Positions 10,545 through 63,954 of a stretch of 64,000 nt of DNA are shown here, one piece after another. The notes beneath the pieces were generated by a model. That model was not told the origin of the DNA and ran no database searches. It saw only the letters and a list, made by a program, of their open reading frames with translations. The stretch lies in assembly GCF_039654945.1 (NCBI RefSeq), contig NW_027361737.1, positions 13,020,001 through 13,084,000 on the forward strand, in the 5' to 3' direction. A program made the translations under genes and the position numbers. The number at the start of each line of letters is the position of its first letter. Within the stretch, counting starts at the first letter, position 1. Source of the stretch: Dendrobates tinctorius (lineage: Eukaryota).

Positions 10545-10684
10545 NNNNNNNNNNNNNNNNNNNNNNNNNNNNNNNNNNNNNNNNNNNNNNNNNNNNNNNN
10601 NNNNNNNNNNNNNNNNNNNNNNNNNNNNNNNNNNNNNNNNNNNNNNNNNNNNNNNNNNNNNNNNNNNNNNNNNNNNNNNNNNNN
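10545..10684. other. Assembly gap (140 N)
   Basis: Run of n characters. Confidence 1.
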
Positions 10685-14023: not shown

Positions 14024-15381
14024 GTGTGTGTATATACAGTGTATATATATAATATTTACACACATGCAGGTGCTTCTCACAAAATTAGAATCTCATCAAA
14101 AAGTTAATTGTTCTGTCCCCACATGAGGCGAATGGAGGTGTAGTTGATTGGGGCTGGGAGAGATTCCTACCTTCCATTTCCTCAATGCAGAGCAGACAGG
14201 ACCTTTGTTGCTGTTCATGCATCCGGAGAGATGATACAAACCAGATATTGTGAAGTCCAGACTTGTTTATTGGAAATCTGGACGTACAGCATATGATTGG
14301 TAATGCAGTACTTCTCCAGAAATGCAGGTGTAACGACCAAGGTGGTACAGCAATGGGTGTGCAGCAAGTTGGTAGCAAGATGATTCAGCAAACTGTGGTA
14401 AAAAAAGCTGATGCCTTTCACAGCCTGGTAAGTGTGTCTCTCCCAGGAGAAAATGAAACTAATAATGGCCACCAGCAGGAAGAGAAGGAGTGACTGACCT
14501 GGAAGTGGAAGGCATGTACTAAAATTAATTAGCCGCAGTCTGCTGTACAGAAAAGGACCAGCAGGTGGCAGCAGACAAAATGCAAGACTGTACACAAAGA
14601 ATGTGTTATGTGACCAATCTATATAAAGCATATAAGAATAACTTTAGCCGGAACAGCACACTCCCCGTCTAAAATTCCGTAAGGGATTTCACTATATTGT
14701 TTTTGTTTTTTGTTTTTTTTTTTTAAATTAAGTTCAATAACCTAGAAAGGAAACACAAATATGCATGCAACAATAACTTCAAAACGAGGTAGATGAGTCA
14801 GTTCCTATGACACTCCAAAGAAAACCCGTCTTCGGATCGGAGAAGCCGCACTAGGCCAAACGGTACCCAACGGTAATCCAATGGACGAAGCACTAGGGCA
14901 GAGTTCTGTTCATGGTTCATCCTACTGGAATGTCCTCAATTGGCAGTATCAATACGAGCTCGTGGATTGGCCTCTGAAATGTCTTAGGCTCGCCTTTCCT
15001 AAGGACCTTCAGCTCCACCTTTCGGACCTTACCGTCTTGTCTAGGGAAAGTCTTTGTAACGATTCCCATAGGCCAGTCGATCCTTCGGGCTTGTTGTTCT
15101 TTCATTAGTACCATGTCTCCTTCTTTCAAGTTCGGTTTATTCTGTCGCCATTTTCTTCTTCCTTGGAGAGTCACAAGATATTACTTTCTCCACTGGCTCC
15201 AGAAGTAGCCAGCGAGGTACTGCACACGTTTCCACTGTTTCTGGTAGGTGTTTGCGTGAGTAAACTCTCCACTAACTGTTAGCTGGTTCCCGGTCTTTTG
15301 GGTGAGAAGAGTAGCTGGCGTAAGAATGGTCGGTTTTTCGGGTTCCATGGACACTGGGACAAGTGGTCTTGAGTTGATTAT

Positions 15382-17541
15382 AAAAAGAGAAAAGAGCCAG
15401 CACTGCCAGTGGTCAGAACGCATAACATGAGGTGCATATGCACATATCTTACTGCATTCAAAATGAGACATTTAGCAAAATATTGATCAATATATTGAGC
15501 CACCCCGCCACGCCAAGGCAATCTCATATGGGGGGTCCTACTCTACATTTGTATTTATTCACTGTGCCATTGCGGCCTCCTAAATGTTTTAAAAGCAAGA
15601 CCATATCAAATGCAATCCATACCTGAAGCATGACTGCATCACTCCCGTGCAGCCAGATGGAGCAGGTGCAGATGAAGGCCAACCAGGTCTGAACACAGAC
15701 ATCTCAGGTTTGACCTCCACACACTGCCTGACCAGCAAACACAGATGAAGGGCAATTGCAGGCTCAGACATGGATGCAAAAATAAATAAAGCCTGGGGCA
15801 GGGCGGGGCTGCCGTGAGTGTGCACAGCAGCCTAGATCAATCACAATAAACACAGAAAAGATGGCGAACATGACCCAGCGTGCACGGCAACAGTGGTGGT
15901 CAGCCACAAAACCAATTTGCAATAAAAAGAGAAAAGAGCCAGCACTGCCAGTGGTCAGAACGCATAACATGAGGTGCATATGCACATATCTTACTGCATT
16001 CAAAATGAGACATTTAGCAAATGATTGATCAATATATTGAGCCACCCCGCCACGCCAAGGCAATCTCATATGGGGGGTCCTACTCTACATTTGTATTTAT
16101 TCACTGTGCCATTGTGGCCTCCTAAATGTTTTAAAAGCAAGACCATATCAAATGCAATCCATACCTGAAGCATGACTGCATCACTCCCGTGCAGCCAGAT
16201 GGAGCAGGTGCAGATGAAGGCCAACCAGGTCTGAACACAGACATCTCAGGTTTGACCTCCACACACTGCCTGACCAGCAAACACAGATGAAGGGCAATTG
16301 CAGGCTCAGTCATGGATGCAAAAATAAATAAAGCCTGGGGCAGGGCGGGGCTGCCGTGAGTGTGCACAGCAGCCTAGATCAATCACAATAAACACAGAAA
16401 AGATGGCGAACATGACCCAGCGTGCACGGCAACAGTGGTGGTCAGCCACAAAACCAATTTGCAATAAAAAGAGAAAAGAGCCAGCACTGCCAGTGGTCAG
16501 AACGCATAACATGAGGTGCATATGCACATATCTTACTGCATTCAAAATGAGACATTTAGCAAAATATTGATCAATATATTGAGCCACCCCGCCACGCCAA
16601 GGCAATCTCATATGGGGGGTCCTACTCTACATTTGTATTTATTCACTGTGCCATTGCGGCCTCCTAAATGTTTTAAAAGCAAGACCATATCAAATGCAAT
16701 CCATACCTGAAGCATGACTGCATCACTCCCGTGCAGCCAGATGGAGCAGGTGCAGATGAAGGCCAACCAGGTCTGAACACAGACATCTCAGGTTTGACCT
16801 CCACACACTGCCTGACCAGCAAACACAGATGAAGGGCAATTGCAGGCTCAGACATGGATGCAAAAATAAATAAAGCCTGGGGCAGGGCGGGGCTGCCGTG
16901 AGTGTGCACAGCAGCCTAGATCAATCACAATAAACACAGAAAAGATGGCGAACATGACCCAGCGTGCACGGCAACAGTGGTGGTCAGCCACAAAACCAAT
17001 TTGCAATAAAAAGAGAAAAGAGCCAGCACTGCCAGTGGTCAGAACGCATAACATGAGGTGCATCTTTTCTGTGTTTATTGTGATTGATCTAGGCTGCTGT
17101 GCACACTCACGGCAGCCCCGCCCTGCCCCAGGCTTTATTTATTTTTGCATCCATGTCTGAGCCTGCATTGCCCTTCATCTGTGTTTGCTGGTCAGGCAGT
17201 GTGTGGAGGTCAAACCTGAGATGTCTGTGTTCAGACCTGGTTGGCCTTCATCTGCACCTGCTCCATCTGGCTGCACGGGAGTGATGCAGTCATGCTTCAG
17301 GTATGGATTGCATTTGATATGGTCTTGCTTTTAAAACATTTAGGAGGCCGCAATGGCACAGTGAATAAATACAAATGTAGAGTAGGACCCCCCATATGAG
17401 ATTGCCTTGGCGTGGCGGGGTGGCTCAATATATTGATCAATATTTTGCTAAATGTCTCATTTTGAATGCAGTAAGATATGTGCATATGCACCTCATGTTA
17501 TGCGTTCTGACCACTGGCAGTGCTGGCTCTTTTCTCTTTTT
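15382..17541. mobile_element. Non-coding retro-insertion: 3.1 tandem 542-bp units plus one inverted unit, 14-15-bp TSD (Penelope/retrozyme-like architecture)
   Basis: Units start at 15382, 15924, 16466 and 17008 (partial); inverted copy at 17061-17541. TSD (t)cttgagttgattat at 15368-15381 and 17542-17555, within the BEL integrase. Copies differ by only a few bases. Confidence 0.9.
17380..17460 (+). ncRNA. Candidate HDV-like (nested double pseudoknot) ribozyme variant; also on the - strand at 15463-15543, 16005-16085 and 16547-16627
   Basis: Element order by eye: P1 ACCCC/GGGGT, P2 ATGAGAT/GTCTCAT, P3 GCC/GGC, 7-nt L3 TTGGCGT, P4 palindrome ATATTGATCAATAT, J4/2 GCTAA. P1 and P1.1 are non-canonical. 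Confidence 0.4.
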
Positions 17542-20246
17542 CTTGAGTTGATTATGGCAGAAACTTCAGTCAGAAGTAACCAAGGTCTCATGCGTAAGCC
17601 TTGAAGAGTTTACGTCCATAAACATAGAGTTCAGGATGTTGCGCGAGATCCCGATCATCCTTTCCCAGGAACCTCCCATGTGAGAACTATGCGGAGGATT
17701 GAAGATCCAGGTGCAACCTCGTTCTGCCAGTTGATCCTGAATTAGCTTGATGTCAGTATCCAGCTCTCGACATGCACCGATGAACTTGCTTCCGCTGTCA
17801 GACCTCAACTGTTTCACCGGTCCTCTGATCGCTAGAAACCGCCAGATCAGGCTGGATGTGTCCATAGGCTCTATTACCTCTATGTGGACGGCACGGACAG
17901 TCTGGTCCCAGGTCTATGTCCTTGAATCCTGCTGCGTGGTCACTTGAATCAAAGGCTCTTATGACAGCCAGGCTGTTTGAAGCAATTTTGTGCAATCTAA
18001 GCTTAGCTTGGTTCAGTATACCTTGGGTCCTCAAGAGTAGATCGATAGCCGCTTCTTCTGTGGGTAGAGATTTTAGTCCATCATCTACATAGAAGTCTTT
18101 CTCTACAAAGTCTCTGGCATCTGTTCCATATTCGGTCTCTCCTTTTTGAGCGGTTCTCTGCAGGCCATAGGTTGCCACTGCTGGGGAAGGGCTGTTCCCG
18201 AATACGTGCACTCTCATGCGATACTCCACCATCTCTCTGCTGGGGTCATTGTCCTTGTACCATAGGAACCTGAGGAAATTCCTGTGGTCTTCTCTGACTA
18301 TGAAACAGTGGAACATCTGTTCAATGTCGGCAGTGATGGCGATGGGCTCTTTCCGGAACCTCATCAACACTCCTACTAGGTTGTTTGTAAGGTTAGGACC
18401 CGTGAGGAGGACATCGTTGAGAGATACACCTTGATGTTTGGTGCTTGAATCAAAGACCACTCTAATTTGCTTAGGTTTACGTGGGTGATATACTCCGAAT
18501 GAGGGTAGGTACCAGCACTCCTCATTTTCCTTTAAGGGAGGCGCTGGCTCCGCATGGTAATTCCGGAATATCTTGCTCATAAAGGTGACAATGGGTTCTT
18601 TTGTCTCCGGTTTGTTGCTAAGTGTGCGCTGGAGAGAGTTAAATCTGGACAAGGCTTGTTCATGATTGTTCGGGAGTCTTACCCTGGTAGCTCAGAAGGG
18701 TAGGTGCCTTAGGTGTGGTTGGTGGAACGCAGCTTCTGGGGTAGGGATCTCATCCCTTTGGTCGGGTATTTGATCGCATTCGATTAGCATAGGTAAAGGT
18801 ATTTCTACGCCTCCGCTGACAGGAGAAGCAATGAAACCTTGTGCCCTTCTGCCGCTAGTCTCTATGCGGCCTGAGCAAGTGTTCAGATTATATGGCGTTG
18901 CTGGTCCCTTGATTCCAAAGGCTTCAAAGAACTTAGGTCCAGCTAGGGATCGATTGCTCTGATTGCCAATGATAGCCTACATTTTTACTGCCTTCTCTGG
19001 TTGCCCTTCTGGATAAACTCTGATTAGGCATATCCGGGCACAGCATTTATCACTTTGGCTCTCCCCACATACCTCTGAGCAGGAGACAGCTGTGGTAGAC
19101 TTGGCGTTATTCTGTGGCTCCCCGCCATGGCTTGTAGCTGGACTAGAGGTAAATGCGACTGCTGGATCACTGGTGGCCGAGGTTGGATGCAAAGCTGATG
19201 GGTGTATGACACTCTTTACACTTAATGGCAGATTTACAGTCCTTGGTCATGTGTTCTAATGAGGCGCAGCACTTGAAACATACCCCAAGTTCGCTGAGGA
19301 TTTTCTTGCGCTCCTTCATGGTTTTGGACCTGAAGCCTCTACTTTTGTTCAATGAGTGTGGTTTTTTGTGAATGGGACACTCACGATTGAAAGACTTATC
19401 TCTCGATTGAATAGTGTACTGTTTATCGGCAGTTACTGCAGGTGGTGGCAGGTTAGTCTTTCTGACACTTATACTGCTCCTCAAGTCCTTGTGTCTTTGT
19501 GAGACGCTTTCATACCTAGATGACGGTGTTGCTGGAGCTGTAGTGTTAGACTCCAGGAAGTCTAGGCTAGGGTCGTTCCTCATTTGGGCCTGTTCGTCGA
19601 CAAACTTGCAGAACTCATTGAACGGAGGAAAGGTGACATCATGTGATCTTTTGTACCTGGAAACGCATACTGCCCTCTTCTCTTGCAGACTATGTGGCAG
19701 CTTTGAGACGATTGGGTTCACCCCATGGGCAGTGTCAGGTAGCATAATCCAGACAGATGAGGGTCACATAACACAATCTATATAAAGCATATAAGAATAA
19801 CTTTAGACGGAACAGCACATTAATTTATTTCAGTTCTTCAATACAAAAAAATGAAACTCCTATAGAGTCATTACAAACAGTGCTCTGATTCAAGTGTTTA
19901 TTTCTGTTAATGTTGATGATTATGGCTTACGGCCAATGAAAACCCAAAAGCCATTATCTCAGTAAATTAGAAAACTTTATAACACCACCTTGAAAAATGA
20001 TTTTTAAATCCAAAATGTTGGCCTAGTGAAATGTATGTTCAGTAAATGCACTCAATACTCGGTTGGGGCTCCTTTTGCATCAATTACTACATCAATGCGG
20101 CGTGGCATGGAGGGGATCAGCCTGTGGCACTGCTGAGGTGTTATGGAAGCCCAGATTGCTTTGATAGCAGCCTGCAGATCGTCTGCATTGCTGTGTCTGG
20201 TATCTCTCATCTTCCTCTTGACAATACCCCATAGGTATGGGGTTAA

Positions 20247-20930
20247 AGGGAACCTGTCACCAGTTTTTTGCCCTACCAGCTAAAAATATTGAATTGATTG
20301 TGAGCTATGCATTCCACGACTATATCTGAAACCTCCTGACACCCCATGAATCCCCCATAAAAACCTTTTATATTTGTCCCGTGCTGTATGCTATTCTGTC
20401 CAGTCCGATGGGCGTTGGCTCTGTTGCTGCACTCCACCCCAACTCGGCTGCTGTACTCATTTTTCCCAGTGAATATTGGAGATCGCGTATTGCATTGGCG
20501 TGTGCCCAACTGCGGGCAAAGCCGAAAATCAGTAGTGCACATGCGCAGTTGTCCTGGAAGTATTTTGCGGCCTTTTCTCTGTTCCCTCCCTCCGCATGCG
20601 CACTACTGATTTTCGGCTTTGCCCGCAGTTGGGCAAAAGCATACTGCGCAAGTGCCGGGGCACATTTCAATGCGCATATGCCAAAGCAATACGTGATCTC
20701 CGATATTCACTGGGAAAAATGCATACAGCAGCCGAGGAGGGGTGGAGTGCGGCAACAGAGCCAACGCTGACCAGACCAGACAGGTTAGCATACAGCGCCG
20801 GACAAATATAAAAGATTTTTATGGGGAATTCATGGGGTGTCAGGAGGTTTCAGATAGTCGTGAAATGCATAGCTCACAATCAATTCAATATTTTTAGCTG
20901 GTAGGGCAAAAAACTGGTGACAGGTTCCCT
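20247..20930. mobile_element. Kolobok/T2-type palindromic MITE
   Basis: AGGGAACCTGTCACC...GGTGACAGGTTCCCT ends, TTAA/GTAA flanks, and long near-perfect inverted arms. Confidence 0.88.
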
Positions 20931-20985
20931 GTAAAGTCAAGTGAGTCTGCTGACCAATCAAGCACAGTGATACTGTTGTTTTTCA

Positions 20986-51238: not shown

Positions 51239-53389
51239 TAGTGTTGAGCATTCCGATACCGCAAGTATCGGGTATCGGCCGATACTTGCTGTATCGGAAT
51301 TCCGATACCGACTTCCGATATTTTTTCAATATCGGAATTCGGCATCGGAATCGGAAGTTCAGTTGATTGACGGCCTGACGTCATCATGATGCGCGGTGTG
51401 TGCGCATCATGATGCGCCGTCATTTCGGGCCTTCCGGGGGTCTCTGCCGGCCTGCCGGGGGGCTGTGCCGGCCTGCCGGGGGGCTGTGTGGACTGCCCGG
51501 GGTCTCTGCCGGCCTGCCGGGGGGCTGTGCCGGCCTGCCGGTGGTCTGTGCACCCTGTGGGGGTCTGTACCGGCCTGCCGGGGGGCTGTGCCGGCCTGCC
51601 GGGGGGCTGTGCTGATGTCCGGGGGTCTGTGCAAGCATCGTCCGATGGGACTACAAGTCCCATCGGGCGATGCCTGCTACCATGACAGTGATTGACACAT
51701 TAGCCAATGATGGGACAGTAGTAGTCCCATCATCCGGCTAATGTGTTAAATGTTAAAAAAAAAAAAAAAAAATACTACATACATACTACATGCATGCTAC
51801 ATACATACTACATGCTACATACATACTACATATATACTACATGCATGCTACATACATACTACATGCTACATACTACATATATACTACATACATACTACAT
51901 ACATGCTACATACATACTACATGCATGCTACATACATACTACATGCATGCTACATACATACTACATATATACTACATACATGCTACATACATACTGCATG
52001 CTACATACATACTACATACATACTACATACATACTACATGCATGCTACATGCATGCTACATACATACTACATACATACTACATACATACTACATGCATGC
52101 TACATGCATGCTACATGCATACTACATGCTACATACATACCACATACATACTACATGCATGCTACATGCATGCTACATACATACTACATGCTACATACAT
52201 ACCACATACATACTACATACATGCTACATATATACTACATGCATGCTACATACATACTACATATATACTACATGCATGCTACATACATACTACATACATA
52301 CAATACATACATAGACATACAGTACATATAACATAGAGTAACATACTTACCAATACTTGTCACATTGTTCCCCGAAGCCATTGTCTTTCCGGAATAAATA
52401 TTAACATAACAAACCACAAAAATACTCACCCACGATCCGAAGCAGTCCACGAGTGTGTCCCACGACGATCTTGGGTAGAGAACTGCAGCATCAGCTGTTG
52501 CTGCCGTTCTCTACGGGCTGCAGGAATCCAATGACGGAAGGTAGGTATCCTTCCGCACTGTATTCCTCCGCCACTTAAAAAAAAAAAAGTCCCTAGTCTC
52601 ACTTTATGCCATTGCTGCGTGGGAATTTCCCACACAGCAATGGCATAAAGTGAGACTAGGGACTTTTTTTTTTTTAAGTGGCGGAGGAATACAGTGCGGA
52701 AGGATACCTACCTTCCGTCATTGGATTCCTGCAGCCAGTAGAGAACGGCAGCAACAGCTGATGCTGCAGTTCTCTACCCAAGATCGTCGTGGGACACACT
52801 CGTGGACTGCTTCGGATCGTGGGTGAGTATTTTTGTGGTTTGTTATGTTAATATTTATTCCGGAAAGACAATGGCTTCGGGGAACAATGTGACAAGTATT
52901 GGTAAGTATGTTACTCTATGTTATATGTACTGTATGTCTATGTATGTATTGTATGAATGTATTGTATGTATGTAGTATATATGTGGTATGTATGTAGCAT
53001 GCATGTAGTATATATGTAGTATGTATGTAGCATGCATGTAGTATATATGTAGTATGTATGTAGCATGTAGTATGTATGTAGCATGCATGTAGTATATATG
53101 TAGTATGTATGTAGCATGTAGTATGTATGTAGCATGTAGTATGTATGTAGCATGCATGTAGTATATATGTAGCATGCATGTAGTATATATGTAGCATGCA
53201 TGTAGTATATATGTAGCATGCATGTAGTATGTATATGGTATGTATGTAGCATGTAGTATGTATGTAGCATGCATGTAGTATATATGTGTTATGTATGTGG
53301 TATGTATGTAGCATGCATGTAGTATGTATGTTGTATGTAGTATGAATGTAGCATGTATGTAGTATGCATGTTGTATGTATGTAGCATGT

Positions 53390-53424
<35 letters not shown>

Positions 53425-53969
53425 TTTAACACATTAGCCGGATGATGGGACTACTACTGTCCCATCATTGGCTAATGTGTCAATCACTGTCATGGTAGCA
53501 GGCATCGCCCGATGGGACTTGTAGTCCCATCGGACGATGCCTGCACAGACCCCTGGAGCCTGCACAGACCCCTGGAGCCTGCACAGACCACCGGCAGGCC
53601 GGCACAGCCCCCCGGCAGGCCGGCACAGCCCCCCGGAGCCTGCACAGCCCCCCGGCAGGCCGGCACAGCCCCCCGGCAGGCCGGCACAGCCCCCCGGAGC
53701 CTGCACAGACCACCGGCAGGCCGGCACAGACCACCGGAGCCTGCACAGACCCCCTGGCAGGCCGGCACAGCCCCCCGAAAGGCCCGTACAGACCCCAGAG
53801 AGGCTGTACAAGGGCAGGAAAGGGTTTTTCTTATTCCGATACCGGAAGTCCCATAGACTTGAATGGGACTTCCGGTATCGGAATCGGCGATACCGATACT
53901 TTTTTTAAAGATCGGCCGATACCATCCGATACGATACTTTGAAGTATCGGACGGTATCGCTCAACTCTA
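51239..53969. mobile_element. 2.7-kb palindromic non-autonomous hAT element
   Basis: TAGTGTTGAGC...GCTCAACTCTA ends, 8-bp TSD GTCATCGG, subterminal ccgata(c) repeats, and mirror arms centred at about 52626 containing a GC minisatellite and a TACA/TAC/ATGC microsatellite. Confidence 0.92.
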
Positions 53970-61677: not shown

Positions 61678-63954
61678 TTAACCCCTTAACAACCGTCGAT
61701 ACACCTTTTAATGGCGGCAATTAACCCCTTCATGACCCAGCCTATTTTGACCTTAATGTCCTGACCATTTTTTGCAATTCTGACCAGTGTCCCTTTATGA
61801 GGTAATAACTCAGGAACACTTCAACGCATCCTAGCGATTCTGAGATTTGTTTTTTTGTGACATATTGCGCTTCATGTTAGTGGTAATCGTAGGTTGATAA
61901 TTTTTGCGTTTATTTGTGAAAAATATGGAAATTTGGTGGAAATTTTGAACATTTTGCAATTTTCAAATTTTGAGTTTTTATTCTGTCAAACCAGAGAGTT
62001 ATGTGACACAAACTAGTTAATAAATAACATTTCCCACATGTCTACTTTACATTGGCACAATTTTGGAATCAATTTTTTTTTTGTTTAGGAAGTTATAAGG
62101 GTTAAAAGTTGACCAGCAATTTCTCATTTTTACAACGAAATTTACAAAACCATTTTTTTAGGGACCACTTCACATTTGAAGTTACTTTGAGGGGTCTATA
62201 TGGCAGAAAATACCCAAAAGTGACACCATTCTAAAAACTGCACCCCTCAAGCTACTAAAAACTACATTGAAGAAGATTATTAACCCTTCAGGTGCTTCAC
62301 AGGGACTAAAGCAACATGGAAGAAAAAAATGGACATTTTAATTTTTCCAACAAAAATTTTTTTTTAGCATTAATTTTTTCATTTTCACATGGGCAACAGG
62401 ATAAAATGGATCCCAAAATTTGTTGGGCAATTTCTCCTGAGTACACCAATACCTCATATGTGGTCATAAACCATTGTTTGGGTGCACGGCAGGGCCCGGA
62501 AGGGAAGGAGCGCCATTTGACTTTTTGAATGGAAAATATGCTGGAATATTTAGCGGTTGCCATGTCGTGTTTGGAGAGTCCCTGTATACCTAAACTTTGG
62601 AGCTCCCCCACAAGTGACCCAATTTTGGAAACTAGACCCCCAAAGGAACTTATCTAGCTGTGTGGTGAGCACTTTGAACCCCCAAGTGCTTCACAGAAGA
62701 TTATAAAACAGGGCAGAAAAAATCATTTTTTTTCCTCAAAAATTATATTTTAGCAAGCTAATTTTTATTTTCACAAGGGAAACAGGAGAAATTGGACCCC
62801 AAAAGTTGTTGTCCAGTTTGTCCTGAGTACTCTGGTATCTCATATGTGGGGGGGACCACTGTTTGGGGGCACGGCAAGGCTCAGAAAGGAAGGAGCGCCA
62901 TTTGACATTTTGAATGGAAAATTAGCTCCAATCGTTAGTGGACACCATGTCGTGTTTGGAGAGCCCCTGTGTGCCTAACTTTGTAGCTCGCCACAAATGA
63001 CCCCATTTTGTAAACTAGGAAACTAAACCCCCTAAGGAACTTATCTAGATGCTTAGTGAGCACTTTGAACCTCCAGGTGCTTCATAGAAGTTTATAATGC
63101 AGAACTGTGAAAATAAAATTTTTTTTTTTCCTCAAAATGATTTTTTAGCAGACAATTTTTTATTTTCACAAGGGTAACAGGAGAAATTCGACCCCAAAAG
63201 TTATTTTCCAGTTTGTCCCGAGTATGATGGTACCCCATATGTGGGGGTAAACCACTGTTTGGGCACACGTCAGGCCTCGGAAGGGAAGTAGTAACGTTTT
63301 GAAATGCCGACTTGATGGAATGGTCTGCGGTTGTCATGTTACGTTTGCAGAGCTTCTGATGTGCCTAAACAGTGGAAACCCCCCACAAGTGACCCCAATT
63401 TGGAAACTAGACCGCTAAAGGAACTTATCTAGATGTGTGGTGAGCACTTTGAACCCCCAAGTGCTTCACAGAATTTTATAACGCCCAGGTGTGAAAATAA
63501 AAAAATCATTTTTTTTCCCACAAAAATCATTTTTTTATCCCCCAATTTTTTATTTTCCCAAGGGTAACAGGAGAAATTAGACCCCCAAAGTTGTTGAGCA
63601 ATTTTTCCTGAGTACGCTGATATCCCATATGTGGGAGAAAACTACTGTATGGGCACACGTCAGGGCTCGGAATGGAGGGAGCACTGTTTGACTTTTTGAA
63701 CGCAAAATTGGCTGGAATAAATGGTGGCGCCATGTCATGTTTGGAGACCCCCTGATGTGGCTAAAAAGTGGAAACCCCTCAAGTCTAACTCCAATCCTAA
63801 CCCCAACACACCCCTAACCCTAATCCCAACCCAAATCATAACCCTATCCTCAACACACACCTAACCCTAATCCCAACTCTAATCCTAACCACAAGCCTAA
63901 CCCTAATCCCAACTCCAGCCCACCCCTAATCCTAACCCTAATTCCAACCCTATC
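61678..63954. mobile_element. piggyBac-like (TTAA-CCC) non-autonomous elements, nested, with internal ~390-bp tandem repeats
   Basis: ttaacccctt starts at 61678 and 61721; ggaacttatctag recurs at about 62645, 63036 and 63420. Confidence 0.7.
63790..63953 (+). repeat. Degenerate telomere-like (CCCTAA/CCCAAC) array
   Basis: ccctaaccctaatcccaac variants. Confidence 0.8.

What the first reader, a model, noticed from the sequence alone, without database searches (positions are those of the whole stretch)
17380..17460. HDV-like double-pseudoknot motif with a swapped P1.1 in every 542-bp unit
Seen in sequence, 5'->3': (GAGT-AGG-)ACCCC [P1], ATGAGAT [P2], GCC [P3], TTGGCGT [7-nt L3], GGC [P3'], GGGGT-G-GCT [P1'], CA, ATATTGATCAATAT hairpin [P4], GCTAA [J4/2], GTCTCAT [P2']. 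This is the element order of HDV/CPEB3-type ribozymes. L3 keeps the first U and the CG, and J4/2 resembles the antigenomic GCUAA with a candidate catalytic C at 17448. Deviations: L3 has UG instead of CC, but a compensating CA follows P1' where GG normally sits. P1 is only 5 bp, or 8-9 bp with an internal loop, rather than 7 bp, and J4/2 is longer than usual. Inference: a variant self-cleaving ribozyme, or another conserved structured RNA, that cuts multimeric transcripts into monomers. Canonical HDV descriptors would miss it.
Basis: inference. Interest (0 to 1): 0.88.

Follow-up and report, generated by a model that had tools for sequence, protein, structure and literature searches.

The report
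HDV-like motif in frog tandem retroelement
The flagged 80-nt stretch is the best-conserved part of a very abundant, non-coding 542-bp tandem retroelement that inserts the way Penelope-like elements do; it resembles the HDV self-cutting RNA but fails several of that family's defining features, so self-cleavage is possible but unproven and, on balance, unlikely.

Summary
Three copies lie on the minus strand of a 3.1-unit array. The flagged copy lies in an inverted partial unit.

The motif keeps the HDV element order and most invariant nucleotides: L3 U..CG, P1' ending U then GG, and C-U-A-A before P2'. It fails on several counts:
- P1 is 5 bp (at least 6 required).
- Position +1 is A-U, not G.U.
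- P1.1 cannot form at the canonical place.
- There is a U x U at the P2/P3 junction.
- No HDV-clan Rfam model scores on it.
- The nested hairpin is at least as stable as the HDV-like fold.

Against a published HDV descriptor it passes only after relaxation to a level that shuffled sequence matches about 5 times per window (0.04 per unit). A post-hoc descriptor that keeps the invariant nucleotides gives under 1.5e-4 per unit.

The carrier is a clean 2160-bp insertion with a 14-bp target duplication. Its tandem-plus-inverted layout, with both ends at the same unit position, is the Penelope-like signature. Its template RNA stayed uncut at three or more motif copies.

The core is the most conserved part of the family and is kept in a second species. 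My best reading is a conserved cis-acting 3' RNA module. I put an active variant ribozyme at about 20%. Other first-stage notes and one follow-up report in this scan claim HDV-like folds in other tandem families of this genome; I could not test them.

The parts
17380..17460 (+). Flagged HDV-like motif (copy in the inverted partial unit). P1 17387-91/17417-21, J1/2 17392-95, P2 17396-02/17454-60, P3 17404-06/17414-16, L3 17407-13, GG 17422-23, P4 17426-47, C17448 then UAAAU.
16547..16627 (-). Motif copy in unit 3, identical to the flagged copy
16005..16085 (-). Motif copy in unit 2. It differs only by AT>CA in the 3' strand of P4 (16022-16023).
15463..15543 (-). Motif copy in unit 1, identical to the flagged copy
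17380..17426 (+). Stable imperfect hairpin: GAGU/GCUC plus ACCCC/GGGGU plus inner CCAU/GUGG. It is the only part of the motif with high pairing probability in the nested ensemble, and its inner extension competes with P3.
   Evidence: pair probabilities 0.9-1.0; P2, P3 and P4 about 0
15382..17541 (.). Whole 2160-bp insertion: 3.1 direct 542-bp units (15382-17063, sense on the minus strand) plus an inverted 5'-truncated unit (17061-17541, sense on the plus strand), joined over a 3-nt overlap at 17061-17063
15368..15381 (.). Left copy of the 14-bp target-site duplication CTTGAGTTGATTAT
   Evidence: this flank reads IINSRPLVPVS
17542..17555 (.). Right copy of the 14-bp target-site duplication
   Evidence: this flank reads ...EVSAIINSR
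15382..15396 (-). Left terminus: 3' end of the sense strand (...CTCTTTTCTCTTTTT), sense-unit position 540, the inferred start of reverse transcription, 81 nt downstream of the motif
17527..17541 (+). Right terminus: the same sense-strand 3' end at the same unit position, facing outward on the other strand
14917..15381 (-). Downstream part of the interrupted host gene: C-terminal region of a decayed Pao/BEL-type LTR-retrotransposon pol (DUF5641)
17556..18652 (-). Upstream part of the interrupted host pol (RT with an FYVDDG stretch; integrase-like region)

Best explanation
The motif is the conserved 3' module of a very abundant, non-coding, 542-nt tandem-unit retroelement that is mobilised in trans by a Penelope-like element (PLE). 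Shown: the 2160-bp block is a clean, very young insertion with a 14-bp target duplication. It consists of a partial tandem plus an adjacent inverted 5'-truncated copy. Both outer ends are the same sense-strand position (540 of 542). That is what a PLE enzyme produces when it nicks and extends both target strands and starts reverse transcription at one internal RNA site. The motif lies on the template (sense) strand, 81-154 nt upstream of that start site. It is the least variable part of the unit and is kept in a second species. Inferred: the module works as RNA, chiefly through the stable imperfect hairpin 17380-17426. It most likely acts as a recognition or positioning element for the PLE reverse transcriptase, or is otherwise needed for template function. 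Its resemblance to the HDV core is either coincidental or the vestige of a former ribozyme. In its present form it does not cleave efficiently.
For: Architecture. TSD and intact host reading on both flanks. Host is Pao/BEL pol. Both termini are at sense position 540 and the motif is at 386-459. PLE insertions are 'partial tandems' with 'an inverted 5'-truncated copy ... adjacent', and non-autonomous derivatives give multicopy head-to-tail insertions (PMC8557442). PLE protein cleaves and extends both strands and starts RT at the same internal RNA site on both, and hammerhead cleavage is not needed for insertion in vitro (PMC11167929). Conservation: the highest contig depth is at 16045-16082; there is one listed variant in the 56-nt core against about one per 10 nt elsewhere; the organism-B contig is 51/52 identical over the core with diverged flanks. 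Strand asymmetry of folding. The hairpin has pair probability 0.9-1.0 while P2, P3 and P4 are about 0. HDV membership features fail. Unit 2 alone carries 4 substitutions (P=0.004 if they arose after insertion), so the template was a heterogeneous multimer that stayed uncut at three or more motif copies.
Against: No autonomous PLE partner or shared pLTR sequence could be examined, so the PLE link rests on insertion anatomy alone. A role in RT recognition is inferred, not shown. The motif keeps nearly all the invariant HDV nucleotides together with P1, P2 and P3, which a post-hoc descriptor never found in 7.4 Mb of shuffles. The variants glimpsed in reads are all compatible with the HDV helices: P2 U.G to U-A, +1 A-U to G.U, the N of CNAA, the last L3 nucleotide, and matched 1-nt lengthening of both P4 strands. 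Multimeric insertions are also common for hammerhead retrozymes, so an uncut template does not exclude a ribozyme.
Confidence: 0.45

Rival explanations
1. It is a genuine, atypical HDV-like self-cleaving ribozyme that processes multimeric transcripts of a new 'delta-type retrozyme'. It would have either a 5-bp P1 and A at +1, or the reader's bipartite P1 (A17381-U17383 with G17423-U17425, a 3x1 internal loop, then the 5 bp) and a swapped P1.1 (U17408-A17427, G17409-C17426).
For: The element order is correct and the invariant nucleotides are kept: L3 U1, C5, G6; Y closing P1'; GG after P1'; C-N-A-A; a 7-bp P2; a 4-nt J1/2; a GCC/GGC P3. There were 0 such matches in 7.4 Mb of shuffles under the post-hoc descriptor. 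The core is the most conserved part of the family and is kept in a second species, and the variants seen are helix-compatible. It sits on the template strand shortly upstream of the RT start, comparable to the hammerhead in the anole PLE (cut site 26 bp and RT start 111-118 bp into the ORF). P1.1 with U:A plus a non-Watson-Crick pair supports fast cleavage in natural HDV ribozymes (PMC13635239). The unit has no hammerhead. Other notes in this scan report HDV-like folds in other tandem families of this genome; these are untested and not independent.
Against: P1 must be at least 6 bp, G1 is invariant and the G.U wobble is essential (PMC8495972); natural P1 is 6-7 bp (PMC4908430); P1 mismatches abolish in-vitro cleavage (PMC3774820). 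At the canonical place P1.1 would be U.G plus G x G. L3 positions 3-4 are GG where the published descriptor requires Y and H, and U17403 x U17453 interrupts P2-P3 stacking. At that relaxation chance gives 0.04 per unit and 4.9 per window. No HDV-clan Rfam hit at E<=10 on 121 nt. The local fold is no better than shuffles and the competing hairpin is at least as stable. The insertion ends and junction are not at the predicted cut. The template was uncut at three or more sites.
Confidence: 0.2
2. The HDV likeness is pure chance and the stretch has no RNA-structural role. Its conservation reflects recent amplification from few master copies, or a DNA-level role such as an internal promoter or protein-binding site (for example the 14-nt palindrome at 17430-17443).
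For: The published descriptor at the needed relaxation gives about 5 per window and 4 in the real background. MFE z-scores for the motif are 0.15 and 0.68. The first stage read several hundred windows of this genome and flagged several 'HDV-like' tandem units, close to what a 4% per-family chance rate would give. In Penelope the pLTR carries the promoter (PMC8557442).
Against: The core is conserved more than the rest of the same unit, and across two species, which master-copy amplification alone does not explain. The strand asymmetry of unit folding and the very stable hairpin point to RNA. The simultaneous presence of the invariant HDV nucleotides is rare in shuffles.
Confidence: 0.3

Closest known systems
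HDV-like / CPEB3-type self-cleaving ribozymes (Rfam HDV clan; R2, RTE and L1Tc retrotransposon ribozymes)
   Same: The order of elements P1-J1/2-P2-P3-L3-P3'-P1'-(GG)-P4-J4/2-P2' is the same. P3 is a 3-bp GC pair set, L3 is 7 nt with U at position 1 and CG at 5-6, P2 is about 7 bp, J1/2 is short, and a C directly follows P4 and is followed by N-A-A. The motif also resides in a retroelement transcript.
   Different: P1 is 5 bp, not 6-7. Position +1 is A paired to U, not a G.U wobble. L3 positions 2-3 are UG, so P1.1 cannot form with the GG after P1'. There is an extra U x U between P2 and P3. There is no covariance-model hit. The fold is not thermodynamically favoured. No cleavage evidence exists.
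Animal non-LTR retrozymes (hammerhead-bearing tandem repeats; newt satellite 2; Xenopus REP4 and similar)
   Same: The units are non-coding, a few hundred nt long, in short dispersed tandem arrays, and abundant in an amphibian genome. They are present in RNA-library contigs that cross unit boundaries and are probably PLE-dependent.
   Different: There is no hammerhead core (no CUGANGA on either strand, no Rfam hit). The 542-nt unit is longer than the roughly 330-400 nt reported for hammerhead arrays elsewhere in this genome. Heterogeneous units argue against rolling-circle copying of a monomer circle for this insertion.
Penelope-like element insertions and their non-autonomous derivatives (for example MRC1/Chlamys; pLTR structures)
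   Same: There is a partial tandem plus an adjacent inverted 5'-truncated copy that forms flanking inverted repeats. Both ends correspond to one internal RT start site. The inner junction is by microhomology, there is a target-site duplication, and the copies are multicopy head-to-tail.
   Different: No RT/GIY-YIG ORF, and no sequence similarity to an autonomous PLE could be checked here. No 30-40-bp 'tail' extension is evident at either end.
L1-type twin-priming inversions
   Same: Two segments have their sense 3' ends outward, there is a microhomology junction, and the TSD is 14 bp.
   Different: There is no poly(A) or A-rich 3' end; the termini are U-rich (...CUCUUUUCUCUUUUU). Both ends are at exactly the same internal sequence position, which fits sequence-specific internal initiation rather than poly(A) annealing.

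Membership tests
HDV-like ribozyme | Nested double-pseudoknot element order (P1, P2, P3, L3, P3', P1', P1.1 slot, P4, J4/2, P2') | tested here: met
   all strands are present in the right order within 74 nt
HDV-like ribozyme | P1 of 6-7 bp without mismatches (PMC4908430; 'at least 6 bp', PMC8495972; mismatches abolish activity, PMC3774820) | tested here: not met
Only 5 contiguous pairs (17387-91/17417-21). G17386 x G17422 blocks extension.
HDV-like ribozyme | G at +1 forming a G.U wobble with the last P1' nucleotide | tested here: not met
   Position +1 is A17387 paired to U17421 in all four copies. A minority variant seen in RNA-library contigs has G there (loose end at 16075).
HDV-like ribozyme | P1.1: L3 positions 2-3 pair with the two nucleotides after P1' | tested here: not met
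   U17408.G17423 is a wobble and G17409 x G17422 is a mismatch. Two Watson-Crick pairs are possible only with C17426/A17427, four nucleotides further on.
HDV-like ribozyme | L3 consensus TYYHCG*Y (published descriptor, PMC4870747 supplement Figs S11-S14) | tested here: not met
   TTGGCGT has two mismatches (positions 3 and 4). U1, C5, G6 and Y7 are kept.
HDV-like ribozyme | Catalytic C in J4/2 (CNRA*) directly before P2', with P2 (6-7 bp) abutting a 3-bp Watson-Crick P3 | tested here: inconclusive
   C17448-U-A-A-A fits CNRA*, but only if U17403 x U17453 is counted as a mispair at the base of P2. Otherwise J2/3 is 1 nt and J4/2 is 6 nt.
HDV-like ribozyme | Match to a curated covariance model of the clan (HDV, CPEB3, drz-Agam and others) | tested here: not met
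   No hit at E<=10 on 6.5 kb, on 121 nt, or at gathering score on the window
HDV-like ribozyme | Covariation supporting P1, P1.1, P2 and P3 | tested here: inconclusive
   The four window copies are identical in P1-P3. Read-derived variants are one-sided and helix-compatible only. No homologous loci could be fetched.
HDV-like ribozyme | Site-specific self-cleavage dependent on the J4/2 cytosine | not testable with these tools
   All runs are held as contigs, so no RNA ends could be mapped
Animal non-LTR retrozyme | Type I hammerhead ribozyme in each unit | tested here: not met
   No CUGANGA on either strand and no Rfam hammerhead hit
Animal non-LTR retrozyme | Non-coding tandem units, dispersed and abundant, present in RNA | tested here: met
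   The 101-aa ORF in the unit has no homologue or Pfam family. 1294 DNA contigs were laid. Contigs from probable RNA libraries cross the unit junction. Transcription as such is not shown.
PLE-type (Penelope-like) insertion of a non-autonomous element | Partial tandem plus an adjacent inverted 5'-truncated copy | tested here: met
   definition in PMC8557442
PLE-type (Penelope-like) insertion of a non-autonomous element | Both insertion ends at one internal RT-initiation site of the template | tested here: met
   Both ends are at sense-unit position 540; mechanism in PMC11167929
PLE-type (Penelope-like) insertion of a non-autonomous element | Sequence similarity of the 3' region or pLTR to an autonomous PLE of the same genome | not tested
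   There is no PLE in the window (blastn of the unit finds only itself) and no repeat library is available

The most novel reading that the evidence does not exclude
Frogs carry a second class of PLE-dependent tandem 'retrozymes' in which the hammerhead is replaced by a structurally deviant HDV-like ribozyme. It would have a short or bipartite P1, A or G at +1 and a relocated or swapped P1.1, and would cut multimeric transcripts 154 nt upstream of the reverse-transcription start. This would extend the known sequence space of the HDV fold.
Probability: 0.2. Interest if true: 0.85.

Novelty: new member of a known kind. Interest (0 to 1): 0.42.

Why it matters
If the motif cleaved, it would be the first HDV-type ribozyme serving a tandem, non-coding, Penelope-dependent retroelement in a vertebrate. 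It would also break rules now treated as invariant for the fold (P1 of at least 6 bp, the G1.U wobble, P1.1 placement). Even without cleavage the locus is useful. It is a very young, cleanly bounded insertion that displays the double-strand, internal-initiation signature recently shown in vitro for Penelope enzymes, and it is carried by a hammerhead-less non-coding unit. It also points to an 80-nt conserved RNA module that is a good candidate for the element's cis-acting recognition signal.

Tried and rejected
1. Hammerhead or other known ribozymes in the unit: none. Rfam at E<=10 and at gathering score found nothing, and there is no CUGANGA.
2. Using the 101-aa ORF that spans the motif to fetch homologous DNA: there were no protein homologues.
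3. Metagenome scans for the core: the 28-mer found nothing. The 20-mer gave 18 GC-rich bacterial contigs with random flanks, which are chance matches.
4. Literal sequence search of papers: nothing.
5. The bufonid BamHI-800 satellite has an 807-bp monomer and is not this family.
6. RNA 5'-end mapping was impossible because all runs are Logan contigs. Contig ends at 16087/16088 coincide with the start of a hypervariable stretch, so I read them as assembly branch points, not RNA ends.
7. L1 twin priming was rejected: there is no A-rich tail and both ends are at the same internal site.
8. A DNA transposon with long TIRs was rejected. A 14-bp TSD fits no common superfamily (from memory, not checked), and the 'TIRs' are simply unit copies.
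9. An assembly artefact was rejected, given the TSD and matching host reading on both flanks.
10. A canonical 7-bp P1 in another register or far upstream: no register works with P1' ending in U17421.
11. Search of earlier findings by sequence was blank.
Full report
OBSERVATION.
- P1 is ACCCC 17387-17391 with GGGGT 17417-17421.
- P2 is 17396-17402 with 17454-17460 (7 bp, one G.U).
- P3 is GCC 17404-06 with GGC 17414-16.
- L3 is the 7-nt TTGGCGT.
- There is a 14-nt palindrome at 17430-43, and GCTAA at 17447-51.

A 40-nt probe finds four copies. Three are on the minus strand at a spacing of 542 bp and one, the flagged one, is on the plus strand. All four are identical through P1-P3. The only difference is AT>CA in the 3' strand of P4 in unit 2.

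CONTEXT. The repeat is not a long satellite block. It is a 2160-bp insertion (15382-17541) made of two parts: 3.1 direct units (15382-17063) and an inverted, 5'-truncated unit (17061-17541). The two parts overlap by 3 nt. The insertion is flanked by a 14-bp direct duplication (15368-81 and 17542-55). Each flank, translated separately on the minus strand, reads ...IINSR across its own copy of the duplication. The interrupted gene is a decayed Pao/BEL-type retrotransposon pol, with DUF5641 at 14917-15174. So this is a real, clean and very young insertion.

In the orientation of the motif (the 'sense' strand), both outer ends are 3' ends at the same unit position, 540 of 542 (...CTCTTTTCTCTTTTT). 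The motif occupies 386-459, and the two inner ends are at 485 and 59. [quoted passage not shown] It also matches the in-vitro behaviour of a purified PLE protein, which cleaves and extends both target strands and starts reverse transcription at the same internal RNA site on both (PMC11167929). L1 twin priming would give the same outward polarity but needs an A-rich 3' end, which is absent.

IS IT A KNOWN RIBOZYME? Rfam finds no HDV, CPEB3, drz, hammerhead, twister or other ribozyme family. I searched at E<=10 on 6.5 kb and at E<=10 on the 121-nt motif alone, where the threshold is about 12 bits. I also searched at gathering score on the whole window. Neither strand has a CUGANGA hammerhead core. 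The 101-aa ORF in the unit has no homologue or Pfam family.

CHANCE. The answer depends on the yardstick, and I report all three.
At the candidate's own helix quality there are 11, against 4.3 in shuffles, or 0.04-0.10 per unit.
(ii) A pre-specified published descriptor from the Luptak laboratory (PMC4870747 supplement). It specifies P1 RNNNN*, J1/2 of 1-51 nt, P2 of 6-7 bp abutting a strict 3-bp P3, L3 TYYHCG*Y, then RN, a 4-54 nt spacer and J4/2 CNRA*. The candidate fails it. It passes only with two L3 mismatches (GG at positions 3-4) plus one P2 mispair (U17403 x U17453). At that relaxation shuffles give 188 hits in 4.9 Mb, which is 0.04 per unit and 4.9 per window. The real background of this window holds 4.
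(iii) A descriptor I wrote after seeing the candidate. It tolerates small junction irregularities but demands the invariant nucleotides: L3 U..CG., P1' ending in U then GG, and C-N-A-A just before P2'. Shuffles gave 6 hits at the U..CG level and 0 at the full level in 7.4 Mb, while all four copies pass.
My honest range is 1e-3 to 4e-2 per repeat family. The first stage read several hundred windows of this genome, so look-elsewhere effects are not negligible.

DEFINING FEATURES. The literature sets these constraints:
- P1 is 6-7 bp (PMC4908430) and 'must be at least 6 bp' (PMC8495972).
- G1 is one of about six invariant nucleotides and the cleavage-site G.U is 'essential' (PMC8495972).
- P1 mismatches abolish in-vitro cleavage, and the L3 G is required (PMC3774820).
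- P1.1 is more tolerant: U:A plus C:U or U:U still cleaves fast (PMC13635239).

The features that do fit are the 7-bp P2, the 4-nt J1/2, the GC-only P3, U1/C5/G6 of L3, and C-U-A-A.

THERMODYNAMICS. The motif's MFE is no better than shuffles (z 0.15 on plus, 0.68 on minus). The stable structure is a nested imperfect hairpin, 17380-17426 (-21.4 kcal/mol for 17380-17462). An inner CCAU/GUGG extension competes with P3. P2, P3 and P4 have probability about 0. P1+P3+P4 evaluates to -11.6 and the P2 duplex to -6.4 before any pseudoknot penalty. The whole unit folds better than shuffles on the sense strand (z -1.85, 5 of 100 shuffles as good) but not on the other strand (z +0.32).

OTHER COPIES AND RNA. 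One unit was found in 20 public runs of the same organism and weakly in one run of a second organism. All are kept as assembled contigs, so RNA ends cannot be mapped.
- In a DNA run of about 2 Gb, 1294 contigs at 80-100% likeness were laid. Their summed word depth was 1e4-1.6e5, which is not a copy number but shows great abundance. Depth peaks at 16045-16082, which corresponds to P1 through P1' of the motif.
- Among the best-supported variants, the 56-nt core has one site (the last L3 nucleotide, U>C, the majority form). The rest of the unit has about one site per 10 nt.
- A contig from a probable RNA library of organism B matches 16036-16087 at 51/52 while the adjoining 83 nt are 'same length, diverged'.
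- The variants seen are compatible with the helices: P2 U.G>U-A, +1 A-U>G.U, the N of CNAA, and both P4 strands one nucleotide longer in organism B.
- Contigs from probable RNA libraries cross the unit boundary. The tool warns that presence in an RNA library does not show transcription.
- Contig ends at 16087/88 coincide with the onset of the hypervariable stretch, so I treat them as assembly branch points.
- No homologous loci could be fetched for a proper covariation test, and no paper prints the sequence.

THE TEMPLATE WAS UNCUT. Units 1, 3 and the partial unit 4 are identical. The inverted copy differs by a single 1-nt deletion. Unit 2 alone has four substitutions. If these arose after insertion, the chance that all four fell in unit 2 is 0.004. 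The differences therefore came from the template. That template was a heterogeneous multimeric transcript of a source array, not a rolling-circle copy of a monomer circle, and it remained uncleaved at three or more motif copies. This parallels the anole PLE, where unprocessed RNA is the dominant insertion substrate. It argues against efficient self-cleavage but does not exclude slow cleavage. Neither the termini (position 540) nor the inner ends (485, 59) coincide with the predicted cut (380-386).

VERDICT. The HDV interpretation is a reasonable lead that fails four tested membership criteria and lacks any positive functional evidence. My weights are:
- 0.45 for a conserved cis-acting 3' RNA module of a PLE-mobilised, hammerhead-less, non-coding tandem retroelement. 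Its stable hairpin lies 114-160 nt upstream of the RT start.
- 0.20 for an active, structurally deviant HDV-like ribozyme.
- 0.30 for chance resemblance with conservation for other reasons.

Other first-stage notes and one follow-up in this scan report HDV/CPEB3-like folds in other tandem families of the same frog genome. I could not compare sequences, they are not independent evidence, and a 4% per-family chance rate would by itself yield a few such calls.

Noticed in passing
window 14615-14660 and 19774-19819: A 46-nt direct repeat (98% identical) brackets the Pao/BEL-like gag-pol remnant, which includes a CCHC zinc-knuckle-like stretch in the ORF at 19167-19745 (minus strand). These may be the last traces of its LTRs. 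Without the 542-bp-unit insertion the bracketed element would be only about 3 kb, so it is internally deleted.
   Followed up: no
window 20243-20934: Nested long inverted repeats (arms of 186 nt at 88%, 81 nt at 98% and 51 nt at 92%) form a foldback or MITE-like palindromic structure just beyond the retroelement.
   Followed up: no
window 51428-51632 and 53539-53804, with 51772-52321 and 52931-53390 between: Two GC-rich 21/41/61-bp minisatellites are in inverted orientation relative to each other. They flank two 11-bp (ATACTACATAC)n arrays that are also mutually inverted, giving a large palindromic repeat complex.
   Followed up: no
window 63791-63952: A degenerate telomere-like (CCCTAA-variant) array lies near the end of the window.
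   Followed up: no
window 16858-17152: The best Rfam 'hit' in the region (MIR408, 27 bits against a gathering score of 64) is simply the hairpin created by the junction between the direct array and the inverted copy. It is an artefact of the insertion layout, not a miRNA.
   Followed up: yes
window 15380-17063 (unit 2 = 15922-16463): Unit 2 differs from the otherwise identical units at four positions (16022, 16023, 16115, 16310). For 16022 and 16115 most genomic copies in the DNA run carry the base of units 1 and 3. This shows that the source array was heterogeneous.
   Followed up: partly
window 10545-10684: A run of 140 N (assembly gap or masked).
   Followed up: no
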